Of a stretch of 64,000 bases of DNA, positions 1 through 54,420 are shown piece after piece. Location of the stretch: the NCBI RefSeq assembly GCF_006345805.1, contig NC_043016.1, positions 18,910,001 to 18,974,000 of the forward strand, given 5' to 3'. Position 1 is the stretch's first letter. Every line of letters begins with the position of its first letter. Below the pieces are notes generated by a model. The model saw only the letters and a list, made by a program, of their open reading frames with translations. It made no database searches and was not told the origin of the DNA. The translations under genes were made by a program, and so were the position numbers. This DNA comes from Octopus sinensis (Eukaryota).

Positions 1-110
1 ATGAAAGGCAAAGTCGACCTCGGCGGAATTTGAACTCACAACGTAACGCAGACGAAATACCGCTAAGCATTTCGCCCGGCGTGCTAACGTTTCTGCTAGC
101 TCGCCGCCTT
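1..110 (-). mobile_element. tRNA-derived SINE family A, 5' portion (cut by window edge)
   Basis: Reverse complement reads aaggcggcgagctagcagaaacgttagcacgccgggcg...gagttcaaattccgccgaggtcgactttgcctttcat, near-identical to copies at 9386, 31290-31445, 50094 and 54048; B-box-like GAGTTCAAATTCC. Confidence 0.85.
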
Positions 111-124
111 AATTAATAGTAGTA

Positions 125-175
<51 letters not shown>

Positions 176-285
176 TAATAATAATAATAATAGTAATAGT
201 AATGATGATGATGAGGAGGAGGAGGAGGAGGGGGTGGATGGTGGTGGTGGTGGTGATGATGTTGATGATGATGATGATGCTGATG

Positions 286-316
<31 letters not shown>

Positions 317-333
317 TAGTAATAATAATAATA

Positions 334-364
<31 letters not shown>

Positions 365-381
365 TAGTAATAATAATAATA

Positions 382-419
<38 letters not shown>

Positions 420-466
420 TAATAATAATAATAATAACGATAAATAATAATAATAATAATAATAGC
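111..466. repeat. Compound trinucleotide microsatellite (AAT/GAT/GAG/GGT)
   Basis: Direct reading; source of the poly-I/N/M ORFs in the track. Confidence 0.95.
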
Positions 467-599
467 AGTTAGAGAAATAAATTATTAATAAATAGAATCC
501 CTAATAGCGAGGCAGTCCGCTTAGAGTTATTTAAGGTAAATCTTACTCAAAAGTCCCAGATTACTCTGTCAACCGCAATGCATGGAAGATGTTATCCTC

Positions 600-1750
600 C
601 AGTTCCTTTTCTCCTACTAAGAAAAGCATTCTCAGAGTAGATCCATTCAGTCTCACTAGCCTTGCCACTCTCATCCACCTTTTGATAAACACACTACAAG
701 CAGCACCTCCCTCTCAACGTCACCTTCCTCTTCAAATGATATTTAAATACATTGATGAGGACTTGGCTAGATAGGAAAGTTCCTGTCTTCAAAAATTCCA
801 AATGGATCCACCACAGCCTTTTTTTTTTTTATTGCCACAGTCACTAAGTAGAGAAAGATCTGCCTTCCTTCTCTGCTAACGGAAGATAGTGAATCGATCT
901 TCAGCGGACAGCTGGATTGGTCTTATATGACAATGAAGCTGTTCAAAACAAGCTCAGAATTCTAATGCGCAGGAACTGAGCAATTGCATGAAGGGCGGTT
1001 TCGTCCCCATGCATGCATCTCGGACACGTTCGGCTGTTGGAACATCCATGTCTGAAAAGCTTTCTCGAGTAGGTGATGATCCCCTCTAAAACCACATGCC
1101 GAAGACTTTTGGAAATTGTTCATGAGCCTCGCCCAAAATACTCCGAGAGAGATCACTCATATTATTCTTGCGATGCCCAGAGTGAACCCGAGGCTATCGT
1201 TGCTCATAGACTCAACTATATAAATCTTGCGTTGTTTTCCTGCTACAAGTTCTGTGCCAGACAACATCCTAGATGCCAAACGCCCAATCTTGGTGTACGT
1301 TTCACACATGACTGCATCTCCGTCCGTCAATGAAATCAGCTGCAGGAAGACGTGTCTCATGAAGGACGCCCACATCAGTTCACCTTTGTTTTCGTTGCCT
1401 TCGTTCACACCATCCCGGTGATTTAGATACTTCTGTAGTCACATCAGCCTCAATACATGGAGCCGCATCATCAAGGATGGCATCCTAAGCCTGCCACAGT
1501 GTGGGTGCTGATTCTAGATGGATTTTATGACCAGCGGAAACTGACCCACAAATCTGCTCAGTGTTTCCTCGGGACAAGGTACGACGGCTAGGCGGTAGTA
1601 CACAATCGAGGCGATGAATGATATTCACTACTTTCACCTGGCCTTTTAGAAACAGATTCCTTTCTGCTAATTTATGGGTGTGCTTGGCGACCCTAACCAT
1701 GACATCTTCCCTGTTCCTATCTACCTACAGATCTGATCTAAACCAGATTA
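600..1750 (-). mobile_element. Old Tx1-clade LINE remnant (post-RT and C-terminal part of ORF2, multiply frameshifted)
   Basis: Minus-strand peptides LAERNLFLKG, FIASIVYYRLAVVPCP, RMPSLMMRLHVLRL, CPRCMHGDETALHAI and LWWIHLEFLKTGTFLSSQVLINVFKYHLKRKV align by eye to ORF2 at 17140-18130. Confidence 0.8.
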
Positions 1751-1772: not shown

Positions 1773-1980
1773 ATCCTTTCTACTATTGGCACAAGACCTA
1801 AAATTTTGGAGAACGGGGTGAGGCGATTACATCGACACCAGTGCTCAGCTTCCATCGACTCTGAAATGATAAAAGTCAAAGTCGACTTCGGGGGAATTTG
1901 AACTCAGGATCTAAAGACGGAAGAAATACCTCTGAGCATTTTGCCCGACGTACTAACGATTCTGCCAACTCACCACCTTA
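1773..1980 (-). mobile_element. SINE family A, diverged, A1-type tail (…ttgtgccaatagtagaaagg(ATT)n)
   Basis: Head and core similar to other family A copies (gtcgactttgacttttatc, gagttcaaattcc). Confidence 0.75.
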
Positions 1981-5760: not shown

Positions 5761-5862
5761 CTATTCTTTTCTACTCTAGGCACAAGGCCTGAAATTTTGG
5801 GGGAGGGGGCCAGTCGATTAGATCGACCCCAGTACGTAACTGGTGCTTAATTTATCGACCCC
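5761..5862 (-). mobile_element. SINE family A, 3' half (A1 tail)
   Basis: ggcacaaggcctgaaattttggg…gtcgattagatcgaccccagtacgtaactggtgcttaatttatcgacccc matches family A core and tail. Confidence 0.75.
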
Positions 5863-8916: not shown

Positions 8917-9160
8917 TACACACAATAAAGAATAAATTAAATATATAAAAAGTAAAAAAAAAAAAATACAAAATATTTCGGGTGACAAAATATAGCGGGT
9001 GGTAATGGTAGTGGGCTGCTGGTGGTGAGGTGCTGGTGGTGATGTGCTGCTGGTGGGTGTTTAGTAGGGGCATGTGAGGTGTAGGGCAATGACGGGGGCG
9101 GTAACAGTAATTTTAGAGATTTCATTCAAATAAAATCAATAACGAAACAAATAAAATGGC

Positions 9161-9385
<225 letters not shown>

Positions 9386-9612
9386 TAGGCGGCGAGCTGG
9401 TAGAATCGTTAGCATGCTAAAGGATTAGTGAAACACTTAGCGGCATTTCGTCTGCCGCTACGTTCTGAGTTCAAATTCCACCGAGGTTGACTTTGCCTTT
9501 CATCCTTTCAGGGTCGATAAATTAAGTACCAGTTACGCACTGGAGTTGATGTAATCGACTAATCTCCTCTACCAAATTTCAGGCTTTGTTCCTAAAGTAG
9601 AAAGAATTATCA
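9386..9612 (+). mobile_element. SINE family A, full length, A1 tail
   Basis: ggcggcgagctggtagaatcgttagc head, GAGTTCAAATTCC, core gttgactttgcctttcatcctttcagggtcgataaattaagtaccag, tail ccaaatttcaggctttgttcctaaagtagaaag. Confidence 0.85.
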
Positions 9613-9732
9613 TAATTATCACCATCATCAACATCATCGTCATCATCATCATTATTTTTATACCTGTTTCCTTTATTAGCCACAAGGGTCATCAAAATAT
9701 GTCGTACAAAAGTGAGGTATAGAAATGTAGTA

Positions 9733-12120: not shown

Positions 12121-12549
12121 ACAGAATATGAGAAAAAAGTTACGTAGTCAACTCCTTTAACTTCAGAGACTAAGTAGATTGGTACAATGTTGATGAATGT
12201 TTTCAGGATGATAGATTGAGCATCTTATACGGTCTTTGTACTGTCAATGAAGAATAAATTGAATGAAGAAAATAGAAGGTAGAGAGAAAAAGTAATGACA
12301 AAAGGACGGCAATAAAAAGTAAACAATTAAGCAGGGAAATATGAAAAAAAAAAAATAATAAGTGAGAATCTAAGAAAGAAATCTTTATTAAATCAACTAT
12401 CATTTACGCAATGTCACCATATCGTGATGTGCTTAAAACAATAACATAAAACTGGTGTCGTTGTTTAGCCACAAGTCTGTGCCGACACAACAGACATGAT
12501 CATGTGGTGTTTTCATTTATCCTGACATTGTGTATATAGAGCTGCAGAA

Positions 12550-12556
12550 TATCTAT

Positions 12557-12632
<76 letters not shown>

Positions 12633-12637
12633 TTATC
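12550..12637. repeat. (TATC)n microsatellite at 5' junction of Tx1 LINE
   Basis: Direct reading. Confidence 0.95.
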
Positions 12638-12836
12638 GACGGACGTGTTGTCACCTCGGCTCCGAAGGTAATCGTTTATTTTGACTATTTATAGCCCATA
12701 TTTTGTGTACATTTTTGTAAATAAGGTGTGTAAGGCACCCAACTTTCGTTCGAGTGCTTTTCCAAGGGAGGAATTCGCCCCTAGGGGCAGTTTCAACCCC
12801 ATTTAATTTGTATATTTTTCTTCTCGACATTAAAAA

Positions 12837-14736
12837 ATGTCGAGAAATGTTATTGTAGAACGCTGGTCGCATTCCTTTATGGACCAGCATTTTCCTAGTG
12901 TGGAAACGCTTGGAGAAAAAAAGAACTTATGCACGCAAAGTGCAAACCTGAATGACGTGGTAGTGAACGCTGCAACCACTTGCGGTAACAGCCCTGTCAC
13001 CACCACCACTAACAACAACAACAACGAGACTACTACTGCTACCACCACCTCCACCACCACCACGACCAACATAAATGATAAAAATGAAACTCGCGCGAAT
13101 ACTATTAACAAAAACAACAACAACAAGAAGAACAACAATAAAAATGAAATAAATATCTTACTATCTAATAGTGAAGATGTTAATATAAAAGAATCAACAA
13201 CACCAGTAAATTTCGCTGACACTCTGCGTCAGAAAAAAGAAATAGTAAAATTTACGAATGAAGAGTTAATAGAAACGAGAGCACTCTTTACAACACAAGG
13301 GCAGGATTTAGTGCTGCATACACCTCAACACATAAAGAAACAAATAGAAAATAAGACAATTATATATAAAATTATAAGAAAAAACAAAATGAACAGATTA
13401 CAAAAACGGACATAGAAAAGTGTTTAAAAAGCATAACGAAAAAAAAGAATATATAAACTGGGGTCCCCAGTTTAATACAGTGGTGGTCCGCTTCCCTAAC
13501 CAGGAAGTGATAAAAAACCACTCTACGGAGTCTTTGCAAAATGATGAAATCATCATGTTACCATATTACAAAGGCCAGAGAGTGAGTAAAATTAGCATTA
13601 AAAATGTACCCCCCGAGACACCAAACAAATGGATAACAGGGGCAATCTGTTACCATTTGAAAAAGATAAATATATTAGAAAACGCCGTGTACAAAAACGA
13701 CAATTGGGGTGGTAAAACAATAGTAGTGACCATCCAGATTGAGGGGTCCTCTATCGAGAACCTACCTGATAGGATCCATTTAGAAAATGAGCAAATAGAA
13801 AATGAGCAAAGCCTATATGTTGTAGCAGAAGGCAAAAAGCCTAGATGCTACAACTGTGGCAGCCCAGAACATTTAATTGCCAAGTGCGCTCTGACACAGA
13901 AAAAAACGAGAAAGAACAACTCAGAAAACAAATAAAAAACCCTTGTTGCCAACACCAACACCAACACCAACACCAACACCAACACACTCAATTATGGAAC
14001 AATGCCAAGAAAAACAACAAACCAGCAAACAAACCCCAACAACATCACCAAGAAAAGAAACAGTACCAACATAATCACCGTTGACGTCGCAACCAATTCA
14101 ACATACTGAACCAAAATATAGACCAACACCAACACCGAGGACGACAATTAAAAAGACAGAAAACAGTGACGAGAAAACAAATTCTACCCCTAACACCACA
14201 ACAACGCAAACACCGCACAAACATGAACAATTTCTACAAGCATACATATTAAAGCAAATGCTTTGCCTTTACCCCTTTCTGATTCGTCGGACGACGAAAG
14301 TTCGACGGAATGGCAAATAGCCACAGGGGGTAAAAGGGAAAGATCAAAAAGCCCCACCAAACAAGGAAGTAAAGCAAGGAGATATTTAACTCCGGACAGC
14401 ATCCCCCTAGACAATAAAAAAATCAATGAACCCGCAAGACCACACAGACAACTAACTGCAATAGACACAGACAATAAAAAATTAATGGATTACATTGCAT
14501 CCAACACGGACATCTGTGAAGATGACTTTAAGACAAACAATCATCCACGCACCACACCATCGAAACACATAAGAATTGTACACATAACACAAACACAACA
14601 CTATACACTGAAAACAATATTTCCAAATGCGGTAAGCGGGTTTCAACGATACCTCTCCAAAAAACTATACAAACACTTCGTCAAAGACACTACAAAAGAA
14701 GAAGAAAAAAATGAAACTTTCGAAATGAGTAAGTGA
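12837..14736 (+). pseudogene. Tx1 ORF1 (gag-like nucleic-acid-binding protein), disrupted
   Basis: Track ORFs 12837-13415, 13420-13935 and 14263-14736; zinc knuckle CYNCGSPEHLIAKC (CX2CX4HX4C) at 13846-13887; low-complexity N/T/Q/K-rich flanks; stops and frameshifts between segments. Confidence 0.75.
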
Positions 14737-14802
14737 CCTTCCCTTTTGCCTCTTGTCTCTTCCAATGTAGTGTGTGAAACACAATTTTCGTAAACGTCAA
14801 TT

Positions 14803-17800
14803 ATGCTTAAATTAGGTTGTGTGAATGCGCGTGACTTGGCGTCGGCTTGGAAGCAAGGTTACCTTCTAAACGACATCAAGTCACTGAACCTGGATATAGT
14901 AGCTATCAGTGAAACCAGACTCAGCAAGCTGCGGGCCCTCGCGTCCATGTTTGGCGATCAGTTTGACATTTATTTTTCTCCCTGTCTGCCGAACATGGGT
15001 GGTGAAGGTACCGCGGTGCTTTTTCGAAAGAGTCTAAATGTAAAAGTAAGAACAATATTCCTAGACCCGGAGGGTAGGCTCGTTGTCTTGGACGTGGATG
15101 GCAGAAATGGGTGTGCATTCCGTCTGATGGCAGTTTATGCACCGTCCTTAACGGGTCGGGCGGATTTCTTCAGACGTCTAGAGGTTTTCCTGGGTACGTC
15201 TAGACCTTTACTGTTAGTAGGGGATTGGAACGCTACCTTGGACACGCATCTAGATTATGTGGGAATGGATAGGAATAGAATGGGATGTAAGTGCCTCAAA
15301 GACCTACTCGGACGTTTCCATTTGTCTGACAGGTTCCGACTCGACCATCCGAATGTGCCAACGTCAACTTGGACAAACCGCGTTGGATCGTCGAGATCTT
15401 ATCTAGATAGAATTCTATGCAGGACAGCGGATAGGGATAGTGTAGGATGTCCACAATTTAAAATAGTTAGCTACACAGATCACAAATTTGTAACGTGTAC
15501 GCTCGACTTAGATAAGACACATAGACAGGGTCCCGGTTACTGGAAACTGAACACGTCGCTCTTAGCGCAACAGGTTAACAGGAACCGGATTAGCGAGTTA
15601 ATTAAGAGGGCGCTGACGGGAGCCGTCGTTAACAACCGCTGGTGGTTCGCCCTGAAAATGGCAATAAAATCGGAATCAATTAGGTTTAGCAAGGAATTAG
15701 CGATAGATCGAAACAGAGTAGAGAGAGACCTAGTTAAGAAACTAGAAGAGGCATTTACCACTGGCAGCGCAACCAACGTGCTGGCTACGAGGATGGCCCT
15801 CGACCAACACCTCAACGCCAAGCACGAAGGTTGCGTCGTCAGAGCTAAAATGCGTGCCTTAAGGAACGAAGGGATCGAAGCTGCGCGAGAGGCCCGGGTA
15901 GCGGAGGCGCAGCGTGGCAACGGAGCCACCATTCGGTCTCTAATACATCAACAGGGATGCAGTTTACTCGAACCCGAAAGGATGTGTGAGGCCTTTCAAC
16001 AGCACTTTGCTCGACTGTTTGGTGCGAGTGGTGGGTCGGAACGCGGGATGGATTTCAGTGCCTACCTGACCGACCTGCGGCGGCTCTCGGCAAGAGAAGC
16101 GGAGTGTTGTGAAAGTCCCATCACAGCCGCTGACGTGCGGGATGCGATGGCGGGCTGCGCGAGGGATAAGTCGCCTGGATTGAATGGTTTACCCTATGAG
16201 CTGTATTGTCAAATGCCAGACTTGTTTGGCGACCTCTTGGCCTCAGTCTACTGCAACTGGCAACAAAACGGGAGAATCCCCGGTTTCGTGAGCCGAGGTG
16301 CAGTGACGTTGCTGAAGAAAGACCCAAACAAGGGGAATTTTATAGATAATTTCAGGCCCATCACTCTGCTCAACGCAGATTTAAATATTTTGGCCAAAGT
16401 AATAGGTTGGCGCTTGTCATTGATAAACTGGTCGACAGGGCGCAAACATGCGCCGTGCCGGGCAGAACCATACATGACAACCTCCATCTGATGCGCTACA
16501 TTGTGGACAGGGTAGTTAAGGATCCTGGCATGAGTGGGGCGCTGATCAATTTGGATCAATCTAAAGCCTTAGATAGGGTCGACCATCGGTACTTGGCGGC
16601 CGTCCTCAGGGCGGCTGGCTTCAGTCCCGCCTTCCGCGGTTGGGTCGCTGCCTTGTATAGCGGCATCCGATCGGTGATTCGGGTGAACGATCACCTGTCG
16701 AAACCGTTTGACATCACGCGTTCGGTGCGTCAGGTGTGTCCCCTGTCGGCGCTTCTGTATGTATTGACTCTCGAGCCGCTACTGCGAAAGCTGGCGACAC
16801 TGAGGGGCATCCCATGGGAACTGGGTTGCGGGACGAGCGTGTCGGTATATGCGGACGATATCACTGTTATAGTGTCGAGCGACAAACACATCCAGATGAT
16901 AGGCGAGACACTAAGAAAATACAAAACGGTGATGGGAGCGAAGATTAACCCGGAAAAGTCAGTGGGTTTGCTACTCGGCACCTGGAGAAGCAAACCCATG
17001 CCGTCCGACTGCGGCTCAGTGGTGGGACGCTGGACGGAGGGACCGGTTAAATTGCTCGGGGTCTGGTTCAGTCCGGACCTCCAAGTGGAGAAGAACTGGG
17101 ACGAGATCACGAGTAGAGTGGTCGCTCTCAGCCAAACATGGGCCGAGAGAAAGCTGTCTCTAAAAGGCCGGGCGGAGGTGGCGAACGCGTACATTGCATC
17201 CGCCATTGATTACCGCCTGACCGTCGTGCCTTGTCCCGACGCCACCATCACCAAACTAGAACGCATACTGTGGAAGGGTGGCGTTCCGATGGTGAGGAAG
17301 TCCATTTGCTGTCAACATCCGTTGAATGGAGGACTGGGCATGCCGTGGTTGATGATGCGCAGACATGCGCTGAGACTGCGACATCTCTGGAACTTCATCG
17401 ACGACGGTGAACAGGTGTGGGCGCCGTTTGTGAGGCGCGCCTTCCCGCAGCTCGTCTCACTGACCGAACTGCAAACGTGGATCAAGAAGAGACCGAAACT
17501 GGGCGATTGGCACCGAGAGTGTCGCCAAGCTCTACAGCAGCTCTGCCGACCGGGGTCAAACTTGTGCAACTTTCAAACGACTAAAGCGTTCTATAGAGGA
17601 CTAGTGGAGGGGAGGTACGACGACACACTCGGGGCAAACCTGAGCGTCGACGAGAAATTCCTAACCCGCCTGTTCAGGACGACGTTCGGGCCGGGGCCTA
17701 TGGACAACTTCCAGAAATCCCTGGCTTGGCAGTGCTATCGAGACGCACTACCTGTTCGAGAGAAGAGCTACAGGCACGGTTCGAAAACCATCACCGGACC

Positions 17801-18224
17801 GACCTGCCCGAGATGCGGTCAGAGCGACGAAACCGTTCTGCACGCACTCGTGCAGTGTCCAGATATTTCAGAGCTGTGGACCTTCGTCGAACAGCTGTTG
17901 TCACGTGTAGGTCGGGCCCGCCTATCGGCCGAGTCTATCATTACTATTGTTCCACCACCTTCCTTTAAACGGGAAAAGAAAACGGTTTTCGTTACGGTGA
18001 TGGCTATGGCGAAAGAATGTGTGTGGTGGACGCGTTTGAAAGGACTGCAAACAAACACCTTCCTCTCTGGTCAGTCTCTCGTCAACTTTTTCAAGTACCA
18101 CTTGAAAAGGAGGATGAGAATAGAGAGGAAGGCTTTGTCGAACGAATGTTTTAATAAAAAGTGGGTAAAAGTGGCAAAAATGGTCAGTATGAAAGACGAC
18201 ACTATTTTAAGCATAAATCCGTAA
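14803..18224 (+). pseudogene. Tx1 ORF2: APE endonuclease + reverse transcriptase + C-terminal zinc motif; one frameshift near 16400
   Basis: APE motifs CVNARDL, AISET, VGDWNA, SYLDRIL, TDHK; RT motifs KSPGLNG, FRPITLLNAD, LDQSKALDRVDH, SVRQVCPLS, YADD; CPRCGQSDETVLHALVQC; split over ORFs 14803-16491 and 16407-18224. Confidence 0.93.
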
Positions 18225-18520
18225 CCAAAAGAGACAACGAGAAGTAAGGCGACTTACTCATGCGTTCATTTTCGAACTGTCTGAGGTGACCTTGGTCTTT
18301 TTTGTAAGTTTTTCTTTCCAAGATTACACCTAAACTGTGAACCTTATATATATATATATATATATTGCTTTTTTATACACCACACAACCCACAGATCCCT
18401 ATTGATCAAAGGTTTTCTTTTTTCTGTGCCCCACCCATCCCACCTCGAAAAGAAAAAATTCTACATTGTATTTCGTCCATTTTTATTCTGTGTTTAGCCC
18501 TGTGTGGCTACAATAAAAAG

Positions 18521-18521
<1 letters not shown>

Positions 18522-18594
<73 letters not shown>

Positions 18595-18597
18595 GTA

Positions 18598-18662
<65 letters not shown>
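18522..18662. repeat. (TATC)n microsatellite between the two Tx1 copies
   Basis: Direct reading. Confidence 0.95.
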
Positions 18663-18663
<1 letters not shown>

Positions 18664-20543
18664 GACCTTTCGACATCGCACGTTCGGTCCGTCAAGGATG
18701 CCCCCTCTCGTCGCTTCTATACGTGTTGACTCTCGAGCCATTATTGCGGAAGCTGGCAACTTTGAGGGGCATCCCGTGAGAACTGGGATGCTGGACGAGC
18801 GTGTCTGCATACGCGGACGACGTCACCGTCATACTGTCTAGCCACGAGCACATCGGCCAGGTCGGCGAGACACTGAAAAACTACGATGCGGTGACAGGAG
18901 TGAAAATCAACCGGGAAAAGTCAGTGGGCTTGCGACTAGGCACCTGGAGAAGCAAGCACATGCAGTCCATCAGCGCCTCCGTCGTGGGACGCTGGACCGA
19001 CGGCCCGGTCGAGTTGCTCGGGGTCTGGTTCGGTCCGGACCTCCAAGTGGAGAAGAACTGGAACGAGATAACGAGTAGGGTGGTCACTCTCGCCCGGCAA
19101 TGGGCCGAGAGGAAACTGTCCCTAACAGGTCGGGCGGAGGTGGCGAACACGTACATCGTGTCCGTCGTCTACTACCGCCTGACCGTCGTGCCTTGTCCCG
19201 ACCCTACCATCACCAAACTAGAACGCATTCTCTTTCGCTTCTTGTGGAAAGGATGCGTCCCGATGGTCAGGCGATCCATTTGCTGTCAACACCCGTTAGA
19301 AGGAGGACTAGGCATGCCGTGGTTGATGATGCGCAGACACGCGCTGAGACTGCGACATCTCAGGCTCTTCGAAGACGACGGTGAACAGGTGTGGTCACCG
19401 TTTGTGAGGCGCGCCTTCCCGCAGCTCGTCTCCATGACCGAACTGCAGTCGTGGATCAAAAAGAAGCCGAGGAAGGGCGAATGGCACCGCGAGTGTCGCG
19501 TTGCTCTCAAGCAACTCTGCCGTTCCGGGTCGACCTTGAGTGACTTCATCACAACCAAAGCATTCTATAGGGGATTAGTGGAGGGCATGTACGACGACGA
19601 GCTCGGGGCGAACCTGGACGTCGACGAGGAGTACCTGACCCACCTGTTCGGGACGACTTTCGGAGATCCCTGGCCTGGCAGTGCTACCGAGAAGCGCTAC
19701 CCGCTCGGGAAGCTCTACAGACACGGCTCGAGAAACACGAGGTCGACCTGCCCGAGATGCGGTCAGAGCGACAAAACCTTCTGCACGCACTCGTGCAGTG
19801 TCCAACAATTCCGACCTGTGGGCTTATGTCGAACAACTGCTGTCACGTGTGGGACGAGTCGGTTATCAGCTGAGTCTATCGTCAATATTGTCACGCCTCC
19901 TTCCTTCAAACGGGAAGGAAGAGCTATTTTCATCATCCTTGTGGCTATGGCGAAAGAATGTATCTGGTGGACGCGTCTAAAAGGATTGGAGACAAACACT
20001 TTCCTCTCTGGTCAATCTCTCATCAACTTCTTCAAGTACCACTTGAAAAGGAAAGTGAGAGTAGAGAGGCAAGTTTTGTCTAGCGAATGTTTTCAAAAAC
20101 GATGGGTGAATGTAGCAAGGATGGCACGTGTGAATGACGAAGCCACCTTGAGCAAAATCCTATGAACCCAGAAATTGAAAACAGAGGGTTACCCACTTGC
20201 AAACAAATGTGGTAACATATAACAATATTGACCAAGGTTACCGTGGTCTTTTTCGTAGGCTTTTCTTCCCACGGATAAACCTTACTTGCTTTCCCCTTTA
20301 CACCATACATTATAACACTGTGATACACGATCCCTATTGATAGTTTTTTTCCTCTTCCCCTTTTTTCCCCTTTTTTCTTCTTTTTTTCATTTCTCTTTTC
20401 TTTTGTTTTTTGTTCTTTTTTTCCCTTTTACGATCGAAAACCTACGCCACCTTTTTTTTTGTTTTTTTCATCCCCCAAAAGAAAAGCCCTACCTTGTAAC
20501 TTGTTCCATCTGTGTGCAGCCCTGTGTGGCCAATAAAGAAACT
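18663..20543 (+). mobile_element. Tx1-clade LINE copy 2, 5'-truncated within RT, distinct subfamily
   Basis: Starts at [16 protein letters not shown] immediately after (TATC)n; ORF 18801-20165 (YADD onward) parallels copy 1 with many substitutions; ends ccctgtgtggccaataaagaaac into tatctatct. Confidence 0.92.
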
Positions 20544-20565
20544 TATCTATCTGTATGTGTATCTA

Positions 20566-20629
<64 letters not shown>

Positions 20630-29130: not shown

Positions 29131-30009
29131 ATATTAATTATCTTTTTTAATAATTTTGATATATATTTAAATAATATAAATTAATTATCTTATGTATTGG
29201 CTTAAGTTTTTCATTGTATGATTTGCCTAATAGTGGTTTTATCTCTAATTTAATATATATATATATATATATATTATCTATATTATATATGATTTATTTG
29301 CTTTTATTTTTAGACAAATGTATTTCATTGAAGCTGTATTTCCGTTAGTAGGAATCTCAGCCCAAGTCATTCATACGTGTATGAATCAATGCTAAGGCGT
29401 TAAAACTGTATAGATATAATAATGTTTATTAGTTATTTTGAGAGAGCTTATGTATTATGTAAATACTTTTACTTCATTCAAATTTCTATTATTACATATG
29501 AGGATGAACGACAAGACAAATAATTTCGTTTTTCTTGTCAAAGAGATATTAAATAGGATCCAGATTTTCTCGGTATTGCCAAAAAAAATAAGTAAGGTTT
29601 TTAATGATCCCATGACGTGTAAAACCTGTGTGATCTTAGATCTATATTTATTAGCTACTGAAACCACAATCACCAGTGATACGAGGTACTGGGAAACAAT
29701 GTGAAGTGTCAGTTGTTTAATAACTTCTCTCTGACACTCGTCATCTCTGTAGTCATGGTTCTTAGCTCTCAACGATTCAATATACATGGCTGCAAACAGG
29801 TCCCACATAATAGTACAGCTTACTTAGTCATGTCCATTATAATGGCACATAACTGTTAACAACCTAATAGCATAGGTATAAACAAATACCACTGCATGCT
29901 ACCGTTAGTAGTACTTTTTCTTCACATCCAATATATATTTCTTTACTACCCACAAGGGGCTAAACATAGAGGGTACAAACAAGGACAGACAAAGGGATTG
30001 AGTCGATTA

Positions 30010-31284
30010 CGAGGGGCGTTCAATAAGTAATGCCTCTGACCCACTTCCCATAGCAGTAGAGCAACGACACTTGGCACAGTTATTAGTCTTTTCCTACATA
30101 GGAACTGCCCAGAGTTACGCATTTCTCCCATCGTTTGATACAGCTCTGGAGACCGTTTTTGTAGAAGACCCCAGATTGGTCCTCCAACCACGACGTGACT
30201 TCAGAAATCAAGGCTGCATCATCTGGGAAACGCTTTCCTTTCAAAATCAACTTCATGGCTGGGAAGAGGTGAAAATCAGAGGGTGCAAGGGGAGGAGTTC
30301 ATAGCTGCACGCCTGTGCTTCTGATCTGGCGACACGCGAGTTGTGGACCGGAGCGTTCTCCTGCAGGAGGAGGATACCTTTGCTGATCTTGCCCCGCCTC
30401 TTGATTTTGATAGCTTCTCTTAATTTCCTCAAAAGTGAAGCATAATAGGCTCCTGTAATTGTGGTACCCTTTGCCAGGAAATCTGTCATCACTACTCCGT
30501 CCTGGTCCCAGAAGACTGTGAGCATGACCTTGTCAGCGGAGGGCTGCACCCTTGCCTTCTTTGGAGGAGGTGAGTCACGGTGTTTTCACTGCATTGTCTG
30601 GGCTTTGGTCTCTGGATCATCGTGATGGACCCAGGTTTTATCCTGTGTAATCAGTCTTTTGAAAAATTTTGACTCATCTTCTTGGCACATCTCCAAATTC
30701 ATCCTCGAGCACTCAACGCGTTCTTGCTTCTGGAAAGGTGTAAGCAACCTGGAAATCCATCTGGCAGACACCTTTTGCATATGCAAATGGTCATGAATGA
30801 TAGTTTCCACAGACCCGGTACTAATCTTGACTTCATGGGCTATTTGGCGAATAGTTATGCGTTGACCTTCCAAAATGGCAGCCTCAACTTGACGGACAGA
30901 CGTCTCATCAACGGCAGAAGGGGGCGACCAGATCTGGGAGCTGTTTCCACAGAGTTCCGACCATGTTTGAATTCACAATGCCAGCGTTTTACAAGGTCAT
31001 ATGATGTGGCATCATCACCATAAGTTACGTTACATTCATTTCATCAAAAGTCTCCCGTGGTGTGCGTCCTTTCAAATACAAAAACCAGATCACTGCTCGA
31101 CACTCAACAGGCTCCATTTCACACTTCACTCAGTTCAAACACCTGTAAATCAGAAACCACAATTAGTTCAGAGCTGTAATTCGCCACTTAATCTACAGAG
31201 GTATAAATAAGTGCACATGCAAAATTTCAGCTAGATCAAACAACTGCAAGTGGGTCAGGGGCATTACTTATTGAACGCCCCTCG
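30010..31284 (-). mobile_element. mariner DNA transposon (DD34D), full length with TIRs and TA TSD
   Basis: 37-bp TIRs cgaggggcgttcaataagtaatgcc(t/c)ctgacccactt at both ends, TA on each side. Confidence 0.95.
30083..31117 (-). pseudogene. mariner transposase, disrupted
   Basis: MEPVECRAVI start at 31117; KVSARWISRLLT, LITQDKTWVHH, KVMLTVFWD, LLQENAPVH; the HPPYSPD motif is deleted; ends RWEKCVTLGSSYVGKD*. Confidence 0.88.
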
Positions 31285-32299
31285 TACATCGACCCCAGTG
31301 CGAAACTGGTACTTAATTTATCGACCCCGAAAGGATGAAAGGCAAAGTCGACCTCGGCGGAATTTAAACTTGGAACGTAACGACAGACGAAATATGGCTA
31401 CGCATTTCGCCCGGCGTGCTAACGTTTCTGCCAGCTCGCCGCCTTCACATCCAATATAGGGACTAGTCGAGTGAGACATATGTTGACAACGCGTTTAACT
31501 TTGTCCATAATGTCTAGCTTTTTGTTGCTCTACGTGCCATGACGCTTAACTGTCAACAGTCCCCTCAACCTAGCATAAAGCAGATAGTACAATTCAATAT
31601 ATTTCACAATATTGTTTTAGGGTCAACTGTCTGCAGTACAGCACCTAGCTGTCAGTAAATGAGGTCTATAGATCATTGCACAATGACCATAGCCAAGGCA
31701 CCTGACTGGAAATTCAGTCTGCTCAGCTACAATTAGTACCAAAATGTCGTGTAATATAGTATGCAGTTCCCAGATAAAAATACTTATCAATATTCTACAC
31801 TATATAGCTAGATAATATAGTTAACCATTTTCAAGTAATCAGACTAGTTGAATGAACAGTCTATTGATTGGTTTTAAGGTCTGTGTCCAAATCATCCCCT
31901 CAGAAAAGCTAAGTGTTCATCATCTTAAGCACATAAAATGCATTTTTCATCTAATCAATAACATAAATACGTAGATGGAATAAAAGAAGAAAAGAGAGAG
32001 AAGTGAAATGCAAGCTCATAATTAAAACTCCAATCATATTTTCAATACTTAGTAACAATATATGTCTTTGTAAAACTGAATTTAAAAATATTGAAGAAAT
32101 AGAGGTAATAAGATCGTAATATATTGCAGCTATATAACATAGACCCAATATATGATTTACTTCATATGCAGCAAGACATATATTACACATCATATATTAT
32201 ACATTGTATTCTACCGAATGCATACGCATCATATAGTTTACAGAACGCACTATACAACCTTTTACACAACGCACTACACAACACATAAATCAGACGCCA

Positions 32300-46150: not shown

Positions 46151-47339
46151 TCACTAGTGGAACATTTCGCACCCTCCCTTTACTAACTTCTAATAAATTA
46201 GTTAAGCGTAGCTATTATGTAGAGATACAAACAGTGTTTAGCTGACTAGCAATTAAGAAATTCTAATTTAACCTGTGTTTTGTACGGCTTTTGGAAGAAA
46301 TCTGAATAAAGAAAGCCGAAATTACGAGGAAGCCCTGCCCTGCTAGAAACTGCAACCACGATCTCCTCCAAATGACATCAATAATCTTGGTTAAATATAA
46401 TGGTATACATTGGACAACTTAGTCTCTTACATCTAAAAATGGTATGGTTGCGGTTAGAATACCTATAAATCGCAAGACCAACTATGGCTAAATAACAACA
46501 AATATAAGTTTCCTGTAGTTCTAAGAAAACTAGTACTTCTGCAAGTACCACAACTGCATGACTAATTAGGATCTGATTAAAGCATATGTAAGATAACTTG
46601 AAAAAAAATATTTCTGACTGCTTCATCTTCTATGAGAAACAGTATGTGTCATGTGCGCTTCTGTACTGCAGAAAATTATTTTACTGATACAGGTAGATAA
46701 AAGTTATAGGTGATTTTGATGGAATTTGATAACAGATTGCGGAGAACCAAGCCATATGGTTAGAAGTACAAGAGATTTTGCCAACTCGCTTATAGACCTA
46801 AAGGAAGAAAAAAAAACGATTTATTTTAATTAGACAATTTGAAAGCAAGAAATATACGACACTGAACCAAACTGTTTAACAGCTGCTTAATGCATTGACT
46901 CTGAGGTATCAATAGTGAGGTTCGCGTTGATGGTATTTCAGATCAAAATGTTGGGTTGAGATTAATATTGTAAGGTATTTCAATGGTTTTACCAAATCAG
47001 TAACTTCATAGAATAATTAATTATCGATTAACGAAGTGATTATATAAAATCATAAGAATTACCAGAACAGACATATGCGAATTTGACTTTACTTGAGTTA
47101 TTCATATTTTCCATTTTTAGAAGAAGTATCTTGAAACAAACATCGACTAGTTTAAATGGTTAAAATAACAGAAAAATAATTAAGAATTTCAACAATTAGG
47201 AATTTCACTGTGTAAAATATTAGACTGGAAATAATTATACTCTAGTATTTGTGTAATACACATATGCTTCAAGAAATGTGAATATGGATGAAGCACGTCT
47301 GGAGTTATCTCGCGTGCTTAATTGGAATTGAAAATATTG

Positions 47340-47545
47340 CTTTCACATTTTGGCACAAGGCCAGCAAATGCAGGAGAGGAAGAAAGTCGAATACATCAAC
47401 ACCAATTCCCGACTGAGTATCAACCTCAAAAGGATGAAAAGCAACGTCGACCTCGGCAGAATTTGAACTCAGAGTGTAAAGATGAACGAAGTGTTGTTAA
47501 GCATTTTGTCCGGCGCGTTAACGATTCTGTAAGCTTGCCACCTTA
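47340..47545 (-). mobile_element. SINE family A, diverged
   Basis: ggatgaaaagcaacgtcgacctcggcagaatttgaactcag…aacgattctgtaagcttgccacctt. Confidence 0.7.
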
Positions 47546-49395: not shown

Positions 49396-49612
49396 TTACT
49401 CCTTTCCACTATTGGTACAATACCTGAAATTTGGGGCAGCGGGTAAGTATTTTACATCACCTCCAATACTTAACCGGTACTTATTTCCTCGACCCGGAAA
49501 GAATGAAAGGTAAAGTTGACTTCGGAAGCATTTGAGCTCAGAACGTAAGACGGACGAAATGCCACATACCATTTCGTCCGTCTTTAAAGATTCGGCTTTC
49601 TCGGCGCCTTTA
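49396..49612 (-). mobile_element. SINE family A, diverged, A1 tail
   Basis: cctttccactattggtacaatacctgaaattt…gaatgaaaggtaaagttgacttcgg…tttgagctcagaacg. Confidence 0.7.
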
Positions 49613-50093
49613 ATGCCACTACGATCTTTCCGCGGTGTTTGCACCCGAAGTTTGCAGTGATATGAGACTTAGATCGTATAACAAAGATAGTACACATACA
49701 TACATAATGTATACAAATACACACACACATATACACACATACACACATACACACACACACACATATATATATATATATGTATGTATTTATGTATGTATGT
49801 ATGTATGTATGTATGTATGTATGTATGTATGTATGTATGTATGTATGTGTGTATGTATGTATGTGTGTGTGTGTATGTGTGTGTGTATGGATGTGTGTAT
49901 GTATATATATATATGTACGTATGTGTATACGAACATTCTCTCTCTCACATACGCACGTGTGCGTATGGAATATCATTTCATCTCAAAATGAACTCCTAGA
50001 TCCTAAAGATGGAGATTGTTTCCAACACAGTAAACTGGAGTAACGCGTATAGAAGTGCCTTGTGGAAGAATATTATCCATCTATATGACTATA

Positions 50094-50325
50094 TATTTCT
50101 TTATTGCCCACAAGGGGCTAAACATAGAGGGGACAAACAAGGACAGACAAAGGGATTAAGTCGATTACATCAACCCCAGTGCGCAACTGCTACTTTATTT
50201 AACGACCCCGAAAGGATGAAAGGCAAAGTCGACCTCGGCGGAATTTGAACTCAGAACATAACGGCAGACGAAATACGGCTACGCATTTCGCCCGGCGTGC
50301 TAACGTTTCTGCCAGCTCGCCACCT
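50094..50325 (-). mobile_element. SINE family A (A2 tail), full length, with TSD
   Basis: Complete head, core and tail; gactata repeated at 50087-50093 and 50326-50332. Confidence 0.9.
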
Positions 50326-50779
50326 GACTATAGACAATGTAGATGAGAAACATACATACGCTCTTACACGTATAGTATGTATGCCTCTATTTAGAGGGCT
50401 AGACATACCAACTTATGCATATGTTTGCATACACGAGTCAAACCATACAGATAACAAATACAATGAGTTACATGTATGTGCACGCATAAATTTATTCACA
50501 ACCGAACATTATGCATCCTTGGAGCAAATAATTAAAGCATCAAGTTTCCTGGAACATACTGTCATGCTATTAGGGATACATGCTTGGACATTTTGCACAG
50601 CTTTACTGCAACACATCGTAAAGTTTTTCTGGTATTCAGCAGGTCATGCGTGGACATTTTGCCATAGCCCTTGTTAATACCAACAACTTTGAAGATAGGC
50701 AGAATAATCTCACATCATCGCCATCATCATCGTTGACGTCGTCATCACCAGCAATATCACCACCATCATCATCATGGGC

Positions 50780-53879: not shown

Positions 53880-54420
53880 CCGAACTTTGGAGAGCCAAAA
53901 AAAATGACGAAATCATAAAAAATGCTGATAAACAGTAAAGCAGCAGATAATATCCCATTCAACTTCTTGAAATCACATATCAATACCAACACCAATTCAG
54001 TATCCCTCGCTGCTAAACGCGGTATGAAAAGAAGATAAATAGCCTACAAGGTGGCGAGCTGGCAGAATCGTTAGCACGTCGGGTGAAATGCTTAGCGTTA
54101 TTTCGTCTGCAGCTACGTTCTGAGTTCAAATTCCGCCGAGGTCGACTTTGCCTTTCATCCTTTCGGGGTCGATAAATAAAGTACCAGTTTCACACTGGGG
54201 TCGTTGTAATCGACTTAATCCCTTTGTCTGTCCTTATTTGTCCCCTCTATGTTTAGCCCCTTGTGGGCAATAAAGAAATAGATAAATAGCCTACGGAATG
54301 CAAGAAAGGCTTAGCGAGGACAAAAACCGATGAAGAATTATCTTTCTCTCAATATCAAATAAAGTGTTCACAAGGATCATTCATGAGGGACTGGAAAATG
54401 CTGTTGGCATTATGTAAAAA
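53880..54420 (+). mobile_element. Old RTE-like RT fragment interrupted by a SINE
   Basis: KMLINSKAA.DNIP before the SINE and IIFLSISNKVFTRII after it resemble RTE KAAG.D.IP and GITLLS.PSKVF.RII. Confidence 0.4.
54048..54279 (+). mobile_element. SINE family A (A2 tail), full length, 15-bp TSD
   Basis: Perfect TSD agataaatagcctac at 54033-54047 and 54280-54294; complete head, core and tail. Confidence 0.95.

What the first reader, a model, noticed from the sequence alone, without database searches (positions are those of the whole stretch)
20492..20541. SINE subfamily A2 shares its 3' terminus with the Tx1 LINE: candidate Tx1-mobilised SINE
Seen: the A2 tail ccttgtttgtcccctctatgtttagccccttgtgggcaataaagaaa (copies 50094-50325, 54048-54279, 29938) aligns by hand with the Tx1 copy-2 end ccttgtaacttgttccatctgtgtgcagccctgtgtggccaataaagaaa at 39 of 47 positions plus a 3-nt gap. 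It matches copy 1 at 13/14 over tctgtgtttagccc, and both stop at the same point. Established: SINEs driven by stringent LINEs carry the partner's 3' end, usually from L2, CR1 or RTE, while L1-type partners usually recognise poly(A). Inference: a stringent Tx1-SINE pair, which is an unusual partnership. The SINE copies here have 7-15-bp TSDs and are not in TATC, so any partner may be a non-targeted relative.
Basis: partly seen in the sequence, partly recalled or inferred. Interest (0 to 1): 0.85.

Follow-up and report, generated by a model that had tools for sequence, protein, structure and literature searches.

The report
Octopus SINE tail copied from LINE
A short parasitic repeat (SINE) of an octopus-like genome ends in about 50 bases that match the end of a long L1-like repeat (LINE) in the same window; this most likely lets the SINE borrow that LINE's copying enzyme, a well-known trick used here with an unusual kind of partner.

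Summary
The last ~47 nt of SINE subfamily A2 (three copies) align with the 3' end of LINE copy 2 (20492-20541) at 39/47 plus a 3-nt gap, and both stop at ...AATAAAGAAA. The alignment score is 45. 5000 dinucleotide shuffles gave 14.4±2.7 (maximum 28), and 25,090 other window segments reached at most 25.

The tail is ancestral to the LINE family. Two window subfamilies (78% nt identity), a metagenome relative and two Argonauta hians copies all carry it. In Argonauta the local SINE tail is 85-95% identical to a LINE 3' UTR fragment. A covariance model built only from Argonauta tails picks LINE copy 2's end and the three A2 ends as the top four window hits.

A second SINE tail type (A1) matches the 3' UTR of a second LINE lineage of the same group. 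A three-part terminal hairpin is predicted repeatedly, but its energy and covariation support are weak. SINE target-site duplications mostly start with (C/A)TAT, echoing the LINE's (TATC)n target.

The "Tx1" label could not be tested. The LINE is L1-like (APE, RT, zf-RVT, CCHC ORF1) and appears microsatellite-targeted (two copies). Verdict: a convincing new SINE/LINE tail pair with a rare L1-type partner. Mobilisation is inferred.

The parts
20492..20541 (+). 3' terminus of LINE copy 2, the segment shared with SINE A2. It ends ...GCAGCCCTGTGTGGCCAATAAAGAAA.
   Evidence: Alignment 39/47 plus a 3-nt gap. Score 45 against shuffles 14.4±2.7. Best window hit of the Argonauta-only covariance model R1, 28.6 bits, E 1e-5.
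18664..20541 (+). LINE copy 2. It is 5'-truncated inside the RT domain and holds the C-terminal part of ORF2 plus a 376-nt 3' UTR.
   Evidence: ORF 18801-20165 hits RVT_1 (C-terminal part). It is 67% aa and 78% nt identical to copy 1. The junctions were read.
12638..18520 (+). LINE copy 1. It is full-length but defective. ORF1 carries a CCHC knuckle; ORF2 carries APE endonuclease, RT and zf-RVT. The 3' end is ...TTCTGTGTTTAGCCCTGTGTGGCTACAATAAAAAG.
   Evidence: Pfam hits: zf-CCHC (13420-13935), Exo_endo_phos (14803-16491), RVT_1 and zf-RVT (16407-18224). The ORFs lie in different frames or are broken by a stop. The tail aligns with copy 2 and with the SINE. R1 hit 18482-18521, 12.9 bits.
12548..12637 (+). 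(TATC)n microsatellite on the 5' side of LINE copy 1, read as target sequence.
   Evidence: Unique DNA lies upstream, so this repeat is not the tail of another copy.
18521..18663 (+). (TATC)n microsatellite between the two LINE copies.
20542..20600 (+). Degenerate TATC/TGTC/TC repeat on the 3' side of LINE copy 2.
54050..54278 (+). SINE A2 copy. The LINE-like tail is 54232-54278. The TSD AGATAAATAGCCTAC lies at 54033-54047 and 54280-54294.
   Evidence: R1 hit 54240-54278, 23.8 bits.
50096..50324 (-). SINE A2 copy, 93% identical to the 54050 copy. The TSD TATAGTCA (element strand) lies at 50325-50332 and 50086-50093.
   Evidence: R1 hit 50096-50134, 23.8 bits.
29938..30009 (-). 3' part, including the tail, of a third SINE A2 copy that is split by a mariner-like element.
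   Evidence: R1 hit 29938-29976, 24.7 bits.
31285..31443 (-). 5' part of the same third SINE A2 copy. The TSD TATATTGGATGTGAAG flanks the whole copy.
9668..9703 (-). Orphan tail fragment ...TGACCCTTGTGGCTAATAAAGGAAA, probably a very short 5'-truncated LINE or SINE copy, next to (CA)n.
   Evidence: R1 15.2 bits, E 0.09.
5762..5862 (-). 5'-truncated SINE copy with the other (A1) tail ...CCCCTCCCCCAAAATTTCAGGCCTTGTGCCTAGAGTAGAAAAGAATA. This tail matches the 3' UTR of a second LINE lineage (locus L087).
   Evidence: 29/32 identity to the L087 3' UTR, score 47 against null 16±2.
9388..9606 (+). SINE copy with the A1-type tail, lying in a trinucleotide microsatellite.
1774..1977 (-). SINE copy with the A1-type tail.
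47338..47542 (-). SINE copy with the A1-type tail and a 21-bp TSD ATATTTTCAATTYCAATTAAG.
49400..49608 (-). Diverged SINE copy with the A1-type tail.

Best explanation
A2 is a subfamily of the abundant octopod SINE of about 230 bp. It has a box-B-like GAGTTCAAATTCC motif and a body that, from memory, resembles the CORE domain.

Its last ~50 nt were acquired from the 3' end of an L1-superfamily LINE family, probably the group annotated as L1-Tx1 in octopus genomes. That family is represented in the window by two copies inserted in a (TATC)n microsatellite.

Proposed mechanism (all inferred):
- The LINE's ORF2 protein recognises the terminal module of its own RNA. The module is a U-rich strand (UCUGUGU), a short G+C hairpin with a CUUGU or CUGUGU loop, and AAUAAAGAAA.
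- Reverse transcription starts exactly at ...GAAA(U), at a nick made by the APE endonuclease.
- The Pol III SINE transcript carries the same module and is copied in trans.
- The LINE copies here lie in TATC repeats. The SINE lands at dispersed sites whose duplications mostly begin with (C/A)TAT or TAT. This fits the same or a closely related endonuclease and priming step acting with relaxed context.

Shown:
- Homology of the tails and an identical 3' terminus.
- The tail is present across diverged LINE subfamilies and in a second octopod.
- SINE and LINE tails are nearly identical in Argonauta.
- There is no poly(A) on either element.

The exact partner subfamily of A2 was not sampled.
For: 1. 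Tail homology is far beyond chance: score 45 against 14.4±2.7 in 5000 dinucleotide shuffles and at most 25 in 25,090 genomic segments, and E 2e-5 in blastn.
2. Both elements stop at the same base, AATAAAGAAA, with no poly(A).
3. The motif is integral to the LINE. It is present in copy 1 and copy 2, which are 78% nt and 67% aa identical. The similarity between the two LINE copies continues upstream of the SINE-like part.
4. The motif is also present in relative L003 (P0002, 69% aa identity...GGGCCCTTGTGGCCAATAAAAGAAA). In Argonauta hians L001 it follows directly after the ORF2 stop and 3' UTR in two copies.
5. Argonauta SINE tails are 85-95% identical over 30-67 nt to the Argonauta LINE 3' UTR fragment, with E down to 4e-11.
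6. Covariance model R1 was built only from 7 Argonauta tails. With filters off, its four best window hits are LINE copy 2's end (28.6 bits) and the three A2 ends (23.8-24.7 bits). Each hit ends at the element terminus.
7. In the last 38 nt, A2 is as close to LINE tails (30/38 to copy 2 and to L003) as LINE tails are to each other (24-31 identities).
8. The same SINE body carries a second tail (A1). It matches the 3' UTR of a second LINE lineage of the same group (L087/P0073, 40% aa identity): 29/32, score 47 against 16±2. Tail swapping on the SINE side points to transfer from LINE to SINE.
9. The same three-part hairpin is the minimum-energy fold in 9 of 12 tails. 91% of cells pair, against 45-60% when partners are slid.
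10. 6 of 7 determinable SINE TSDs start with (C/A)TAT or TAT. The background for TAT at offset 0 or 1 is 5-9%.
Against: - No experiment shows mobilisation.
- The best LINE match to A2 is only about 80% identical, so the real partner subfamily is unsampled.
- Both window LINE copies are dead: copy 1 has frameshifts and a stop, and copy 2 is truncated.
- Hairpin stability is not better than shuffles for most tails (z from +0.6 to -3.2).
- Only 2 of 12 pairs show double-sided changes, and the structure was derived from these same sequences.
- The TSD preference rests on 7 copies with hand-set boundaries.
- The Tx1 clade assignment was not tested. Three homology searches returned no protein named Tx1.
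- Only about 120 kb of cephalopod DNA outside the window could be examined, so 3' ends of other LINE clades (RTE, CR1, Dong-R4) were not compared systematically.
Confidence: 0.72

Rival explanations
1. The tail is a relic. A2 once took the tail from this LINE family, but its amplification was, or is, driven by another LINE (RTE, CR1 or Dong-R4, all active in octopus), or through some feature other than the tail.
For: O. vulgaris has several active LINE clades besides L1-Tx1 (PMC13282606). No LINE tail more than about 80% identical to A2 was found. The SINE copies are not in TATC repeats.
Against: The tail and its exact terminus are conserved in all three A2 copies. They are also conserved in the Argonauta SINE, where they track the local LINE tail at 85-95%. 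SINE TSDs start with TAT-like bases that resemble the LINE target. No other LINE-like 3' end in about 180 kb scored with R1.
Confidence: 0.15
2. The direction is reversed, or the match is a juxtaposition. Either 20492-20541 is a 5'-truncated SINE fragment lying next to the LINE, or the LINE captured a SINE tail in these copies only.
For: Very short 5'-truncated tails do occur, for example window 9668-9703 and the tail-in-tail arrangement in Argonauta L001 1457-1528.
Against: LINE-LINE homology runs without a break through the 3' UTR into the tail. The tail is found at the end of LINE 3' UTRs in four further independent copies from at least two other sources. LINE tails carry their own diagnostic stem (AGCC/GGCT with a CTGTGT loop) rather than the A2 stem (GCCC/GGGC). 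The SINE body carries two different tails, each matching a different LINE lineage.
Confidence: 0.05
3. Convergence on a common signal. Both elements independently carry AATAAA (a poly(A) signal) preceded by a GU-rich segment or hairpin, with no partnership.
For: AATAAA is a generic signal. The tails are pyrimidine-rich, and the hairpin is thermodynamically weak.
Against: The similarity covers 47-67 nt, not just the hexamer, and survives dinucleotide shuffling. A Pol III SINE without a poly(A) tail has no use for a poly(A) signal. SINE and LINE tails are nearly identical within Argonauta.
Confidence: 0.05
4. The similarity is due to chance or base composition.
For: Both regions are short and pyrimidine-rich.
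Against: z = 11 against dinucleotide shuffles, and no genomic segment comes close. There is independent recovery by a model trained on another species.
Confidence: 0.01

Closest known systems
Stringent-type SINE/LINE pairs with a common 3' tail (eel UnaSINE1/UnaL2, MIR/L2, CORE-SINE Mar-1/RTE; Okada, Ohshima, Kajikawa)
   Same: The SINE ends in about 50 nt homologous to the partner LINE's 3' end. Both have the same terminus, a predicted terminal stem-loop and no poly(A). One SINE body carries tails swapped between LINE lineages.
   Different: The partner here is an L1-superfamily LINE, not L2, CR1 or RTE. The hairpin is short (3-5 bp core). The LINE copies seen sit in a microsatellite, whereas the SINE is dispersed. 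No assay has been done.
L1-clade pairs with shared tails in plants and algae (maize ZmSINE2/3 with the monocot-1a L1 lineage, tobacco TS SINE, Chlamydomonas SINEX-3_CR/L1-1_CR; PMC3472496, PMC3747384)
   Same: An L1-type LINE lineage has a conserved last ~45 nt that forms a hairpin, and SINEs carry the same end. These pairs are exceptions to the poly(A)-based 'relaxed' L1 rule.
   Different: Those are plants or green algae, and most still end in poly(A). This case is an animal (cephalopod), with no poly(A) and a microsatellite-associated LINE.
SINEU / Tx1-Mar in crocodilians (Kojima 2015, PMC4494074)
   Same: SINEs are proposed to be mobilised by Tx1-clade LINEs. The Tx1 relatives are target-specific, including microsatellite targets such as (TTCC)n/(TTTC)n, Kibi (TC)n and Koshi (TTC)n.
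   Different: That partnership was inferred from shared target preference and shared 5' heads. SINEU ends in poly(A), and no LINE sharing its 3' terminus was found. Here the link is the 3' tail, and the SINE does not share the LINE's full target.
Octopus CORE-type tRNA SINEs (OR1/OR2, Ohshima & Okada 1994; 'tRNA-Core' in PMC8967140)
   Same: Same host group, same size class, a box-B-like motif and a body that resembles the CORE domain.
   Different: No LINE partner is named for octopus SINEs in the papers searched.

Membership tests
SINE | Short (<700 bp), non-coding, dispersed in multiple copies, flanked by target-site duplications | tested here: met
   About 230 bp. Three A2 and six A1-type copies in 64 kb. 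TSDs of 8, 15, 16 and 21 bp.
SINE | 5' head derived from a Pol III RNA (tRNA) with internal A and B boxes | tested here: inconclusive
   A box-B-like GAGTTCAAATTCC motif is visible in the sequence. ARAGORN and Rfam found no tRNA in the window or in the SINE copy.
CORE-SINE superfamily | Conserved ~60-bp CORE central domain | not tested
   Resemblance of ...TTTCATCCTTTCGGGGTCGATAAATAAAGTACC... to the MIR core is recalled from memory only. The literature says octopus SINEs are mainly tRNA-Core and tRNA-Deu (PMC8967140).
Stringent-type SINE/LINE pair | SINE 3' end homologous to the 3' end of a LINE in the same genome, with the same terminus | tested here: met
   Also met in Argonauta.
Stringent-type SINE/LINE pair | Conserved 3' stem-loop supported by compensatory changes | tested here: inconclusive
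   The same fold is the MFE in 9 of 12 tails, but z is only +0.6 to -3.2. 91% of cells pair against 45-60% when slid. Only 2 pairs have double changes: G-C to C-G in A2 and C-G to G-C in A1. A distant relative, L086, has a different stem of the same architecture before ACAATAAAG.
Stringent-type SINE/LINE pair | The tail is required for retrotransposition by the LINE's protein | not testable with these tools
   Needs a retrotransposition assay.
Tx1 clade of non-LTR retrotransposons | The RT domain groups with Xenopus Tx1L and Keno/Kibi/Koshi in an RT phylogeny (RTclass1) | not testable with these tools
   No named Tx1 sequence could be retrieved. The best solved structure is human L1 ORF2p, E 1.4e-17, against R2 at 2e-12. 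O. vulgaris annotation lists L1-Tx1 as the only L1-type group among active LINEs (PMC13282606).
Tx1 clade of non-LTR retrotransposons | L1-like architecture: ORF1, then ORF2 with APE endonuclease, RT and a C-terminal Cys/His zinc motif | tested here: met
   zf-CCHC in ORF1. Exo_endo_phos, RVT_1 and zf-RVT in ORF2. Relatives carry the same Pfam domains.
Tx1 clade of non-LTR retrotransposons | Target-specific insertion (typical of the clade, not defining) | tested here: met
   Two different subfamilies lie in the same orientation in one (TATC)n array, with repeat on both sides of the full-length copy. n = 2. Relatives L003 and L005 end next to (ATT)n and (CA)n. The Argonauta copies are not in repeats.
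Relaxed (poly(A)-dependent) L1-type SINE mobilisation (Alu/B1-like) | SINE and LINE end in poly(A) and share no other 3' sequence | tested here: not met
   No A-tail on any A2 copy or on either LINE copy. They share about 50 nt.

The most novel reading that the evidence does not exclude
The dominant octopod SINEs, about 11% of the O. vulgaris genome, may be driven by microsatellite-targeting L1-Tx1-type LINEs. These LINEs would recognise a specific 3' stem-loop rather than poly(A), and SINE subfamilies would arise by swapping tails between LINE lineages. That would be the first animal example of stringent 3'-end recognition in the L1 superfamily. It would support the idea that stringent recognition is ancestral to L1-type elements. 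It would also show a target-specific endonuclease acting at relaxed (TAT) sites when working in trans.
Probability: 0.4. Interest if true: 0.6.

Novelty: new member of a known kind. Interest (0 to 1): 0.45.

Why it matters
SINEs make up roughly a tenth of octopus genomes, and their expansion has been linked to cephalopod genome evolution. None of the papers I could search names the LINE that moves them.

A tail-based link to an L1-type, probably L1-Tx1, LINE would name that engine. It would add a rare animal case to the handful of L1-clade pairs with shared tails, which so far come from plants and algae. It would also give a testable model: a short terminal hairpin plus AAUAAAGAAA as the recognition element, and TAT(C) as the nick and priming context. 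That model could show how a target-specific LINE mobilises a dispersed SINE.

Tried and rejected
1. Clade labelling. Three homology searches returned no protein named Tx1: the window RT, a profile including vertebrate, amphioxus and arachnid hits, and a turtle hit. The third search was swamped by turtle copies. A paper supplement listed only an accession number for Tx1. I fetched a turtle relative (P0140, L088) to see whether it sits in (TTCC)n/(TTTC)n like crocodilian Tx1. It ends in A24 with no microsatellite, so it gave no label.
2. More cephalopod DNA.
   - A protein-pattern scan of metagenome contigs confirmed no relative of the query by tblastn.
   - The tail pattern in metagenome contigs gave 28 hits and in prokaryote genome contigs 50 hits. 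Both counts are close to chance, and none has upstream similarity.
   - A SINE-body pattern in viral contigs gave 0 hits.
   - P0005 was not on record.
3. tRNA origin of the SINE head. ARAGORN and Rfam found nothing.
4. Thermodynamic support for the hairpin was not significant for most tails.
5. A simple 4-bp hairpin search by regex misplaced the loop. I replaced it with the covariance-model alignment.
6. Other window ORFs of at least 150 aa gave no Pfam hits, so no other LINE clade in the window was available to compare.
7. The weak tail-like site at 816-856 and 824-836 (GGCAATAAAAAAA...) is followed by an A-run and has no SINE or LINE body. I left it unassigned.
Full report
**Setting.** The window is AT-rich and full of microsatellites. 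Its longest ORFs belong to a LINE whose closest protein relatives are cephalopod: Argonauta hians at 60% identity, Acanthosepion, and unnamed contigs at 67-69%. It therefore comes from an octopod-like genome.

**The LINE.**
- Copy 1 (12638-18520, + strand) is full-length but defective.
  - It has an ORF1 fragment with a CCHC knuckle.
  - Its ORF2 carries an APE endonuclease, a reverse transcriptase and a zf-RVT zinc motif, spread over different frames.
- Copy 2 (18664-20541, + strand) is truncated inside the RT domain.
- The two copies are 78% identical in DNA and 67% in protein, so they belong to different subfamilies.
- Both lie in the same orientation inside one (TATC)n array, and the repeat flanks the full-length copy on both sides. 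Unique DNA lies upstream of the 5' repeat.
- This looks like microsatellite-targeted insertion, but n = 2.

**The SINE.**
- A ~230-bp element occurs nine times in the window.
- Three copies form subfamily A2: 54050-54278 (+), 50096-50324 (-), and 29938-30009 plus 31285-31443 (-).
- The third copy is split at a TA by a 1275-bp mariner-like element with 25-bp inverted ends.
- The A2 copies are 90-93% identical and have TSDs of 15, 8 and 16 bp.
- The other six copies carry a different tail (A1).
- ARAGORN and Rfam do not recognise a tRNA in the head. A box-B-like motif is visible.
- The body resembles the CORE domain. I recall this from memory and did not test it. The literature describes octopus SINEs as mainly tRNA-Core and tRNA-Deu.

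**Checking the observation.**
- The A2 tail aligns with LINE copy 2's end at 39 of 47 positions with one 3-nt gap. Both sequences end at AATAAAGAAA.
- Copy 1 matches at 13/14 over TCTGTGTTTAGCCC.
- The score of 45 compares with 14.4±2.7 (maximum 28) in 5000 dinucleotide shuffles. It compares with a maximum of 25 among 25,090 other 55-nt segments of the window.
- Copy 1 scores 31, which 2 of 5000 shuffles reach.

**Is the tail the LINE's own?** Yes, on four grounds.
- The two LINE copies are homologous through the 3' UTR into the tail.
- A relative on a metagenome contig (L003, 69% aa identity) ends ...GGGCCCTTGTGGCCAATAAAAGAAA and is then followed by (ATT)n.
- In Argonauta hians (L001) the ORF2 stop is followed by a 270-nt UTR ending ...CAGCCAGGTGGCTAAGAAAGAAA.
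- A second, 5'-truncated LINE copy in Argonauta ends ...CGGCCCTTGTGGCTAATAAAGAAA. Its UTR is 77% identical to the first.

The motif is therefore shared by LINE lineages that are only 60-69% identical in protein. This rules out a recent capture of a SINE tail.

**Independent confirmation from Argonauta.**
- The same 22-kb locus holds at least seven SINE-like copies. Their tails...CCTTCTGTGTTCGGCCCTTGTGGCTAATAGAGAAA, are 85-95% identical over 30-67 nt to the Argonauta LINE UTR fragment, with E down to 4e-11.
- I built a covariance model from seven Argonauta tails only and scanned the window with filters off.
- The four best hits are LINE copy 2's terminus (28.6 bits, E 1e-5) and the three A2 termini (23.8-24.7 bits). 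Each hit ends at the element's last bases.
- The next hits are an orphan tail at 9668-9703 (15.2 bits) and LINE copy 1's end (12.9 bits).
- In the last 38 nt, A2 is as close to LINE tails (30/38) as LINE tails are to each other (24-31 identities). So A2's tail lies inside the LINE family's diversity, but its exact donor subfamily was not sampled.

**A second tail, a second LINE lineage.**
- The least-diverged A1 tail (window 5762-5830, minus strand) matches the 3' UTR of LINE L087. L087 encodes P0073, which is 40% identical to the window RT and comes from an ENA assembly without this SINE.
- The match is 29 of 32 positions, CCCCTCCCCCAAAA..TC.AGGCCTTGTGCCT. It scores 47 against 16±2 (maximum 28) in 1000 mononucleotide shuffles of the SINE tail.
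- Other A1 copies are too decayed to reach significance on their own.
- One SINE body with two tails, each matching a different lineage of one LINE group, argues for transfer from LINE to SINE and for repeated tail exchange.

**Structure.**
- The tails can form a three-part hairpin. Its outer and middle helices are UCU/AGA and UGU(U)/(A)AUA.
- Its core is 3-5 bp of G+C (AGCC/GGCT, GGCC/GGCC, GCCC/GGGC or AGGC/GCCU) closing a CUUGU or CUGUGU loop.
- This is the minimum-energy fold in 9 of 12 tails. Stabilities are ordinary, with z from +0.6 to -3.2.
- On the model-fitted alignment 91% of cells pair, against 45-60% when partners are slid. Only two core pairs show double-sided changes. The structure was derived from these sequences.
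- A distant relative (L086, 44% aa identity) has a different stem, GGTTGGT/ACCAAC, just before ACAATAAAG. This echoes LINE copy 1.
- I treat the hairpin as plausible but not established.

**Insertion sites.**
- Neither the SINE nor the LINE has a poly(A) tail.
- Of the seven SINE copies with a determinable TSD, six have TSDs that begin with (C/A)TAT or TAT. The seven are three A2 and one A1 copy in the window, and three copies in Argonauta.
- The background for TAT at offset 0 or 1 is 5-9%.
- The LINE junctions read GAAA-C-TTATCTATC and AAAG-TTATCTATC.
- In Argonauta, SINEs also sit directly after other tails.
- This suggests a shared nick and priming context, TAT(C). The sample is small and I set the boundaries by eye.

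**Clade.**
- I could not obtain a named Tx1 reference, so Tx1 membership is untested.
- What is shown is L1-like architecture. Human L1 ORF2p is the best solved-structure match, E 1.4e-17, against R2 at 2e-12. Insertion into a microsatellite was described above.
- Published O. vulgaris annotation lists L1-Tx1 as the only L1-type group among active LINEs, with 13 families.
- The label is probable.

**Comparison with what is known.**
- Tail sharing between SINEs and stringent LINEs is textbook. L1-clade cases are rare: 3 SINEs among more than 800 L1-clade LINEs, all from plants or algae in the sources read.
- The reported Tx1-SINE pair, SINEU/Tx1-Mar, has poly(A) and no shared tail.
- Known microsatellite targets of APE-type LINEs in those sources are ACAY, AC, TC, TTC, TAA and TTCC/TTTC. 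TATC is not among them.
- No paper in the searchable library names a LINE partner for octopus SINEs. Repbase and Dfam could not be consulted.

**Verdict.**
- The partnership reading is well supported by sequence evidence from two species.
- The Tx1 label, the stem-loop and mobilisation itself remain inferences.
- This is a new member of a well-known kind with an uncommon partner clade, of moderate interest.

Noticed in passing
window 12548-20600: Two LINE copies of different subfamilies (78% nt identity) lie head-to-tail in the same orientation inside one (TATC)n microsatellite, with repeat on both sides of the full-length copy. (TATC)n is not among the microsatellite targets listed for APE-type LINEs in the papers read (ACAY, AC, TC, TTC, TAA, TTCC/TTTC).
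   Followed up: partly
L003 1990-2105; L005 1740-1781: Close LINE relatives end next to other microsatellites: (ATT)n after ...AATAAAAGAAATC in L003, and CA-rich sequence after ...GGCCAAT in L005. Subfamilies may differ in microsatellite target or in tail repeat.
   Followed up: no
window 30010-31284: A decayed mariner-like DNA transposon of 1275 bp is inserted at a TA inside an A2 SINE copy. It has 25-bp inverted ends CGAGGGGCGTTCAATAAGTAATGCC and transposase-like ORF fragments on the minus strand.
   Followed up: partly
window 5762-5830 (-) and L087 14100-14140, L035 12690-12740: The other SINE tail type (A1) matches the 3' UTR of a second LINE lineage (P0073/P0008, 40-42% aa identity to the window LINE) at 29/32. 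The match comes from an assembly in which this SINE was not found in the ~45 kb examined.
   Followed up: partly
L086 4760-4800: A distant relative from a TARA Oceans metagenome (44% aa identity) has a hairpin GGTTGGT-GCAT-ACCAAC directly before ACAATAAAG. The architecture is the same as window LINE copy 1 (TAGCC-CTGTGT-GGCTA, then CAATAAAAAG), with a different stem sequence.
   Followed up: no
L001 14800-15320 and 1457-1528: In Argonauta one SINE is inserted directly after the end of another, and a 15-nt tail fragment sits directly after a SINE tail. Element ends (…GAAATCTAT) may themselves be preferred targets.
   Followed up: no
window 1-470, 1774-1790, 9130-9680: Several A1-type SINE copies lie in or beside trinucleotide microsatellites (AAT/ATT, GTT, ATC). 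It is unclear whether these are targets, SINE-borne tails that expanded, or coincidence in a microsatellite-rich genome.
   Followed up: no
window 9668-9703 (-): An orphan tail, ...TGACCCTTGTGGCTAATAAAGGAAA, has no SINE or LINE body upstream and is preceded by (CA)n. It is probably an extremely 5'-truncated copy.
   Followed up: partly
protein P0005: A protein deposited as 'MAG: zinc-binding domain-containing protein [Herbaspirillum sp.]' is 61% identical to the C-terminal part of this cephalopod LINE ORF2. It is most likely host contamination in a metagenome-assembled genome.
   Followed up: no
window 816-880 (-): ...GACTGTGGCAATAAAAAAAAAAAAGG resembles the tail core but is followed by an A-run and lacks a recognisable SINE or LINE body. 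Left unassigned.
   Followed up: no
L088 7340-7400: The turtle (Caretta) relative of this LINE group ends in AAATAAATTTCTTTTCTGTTTT followed by A24, with no microsatellite. More distant vertebrate relatives therefore use poly(A) ends.
   Followed up: partly
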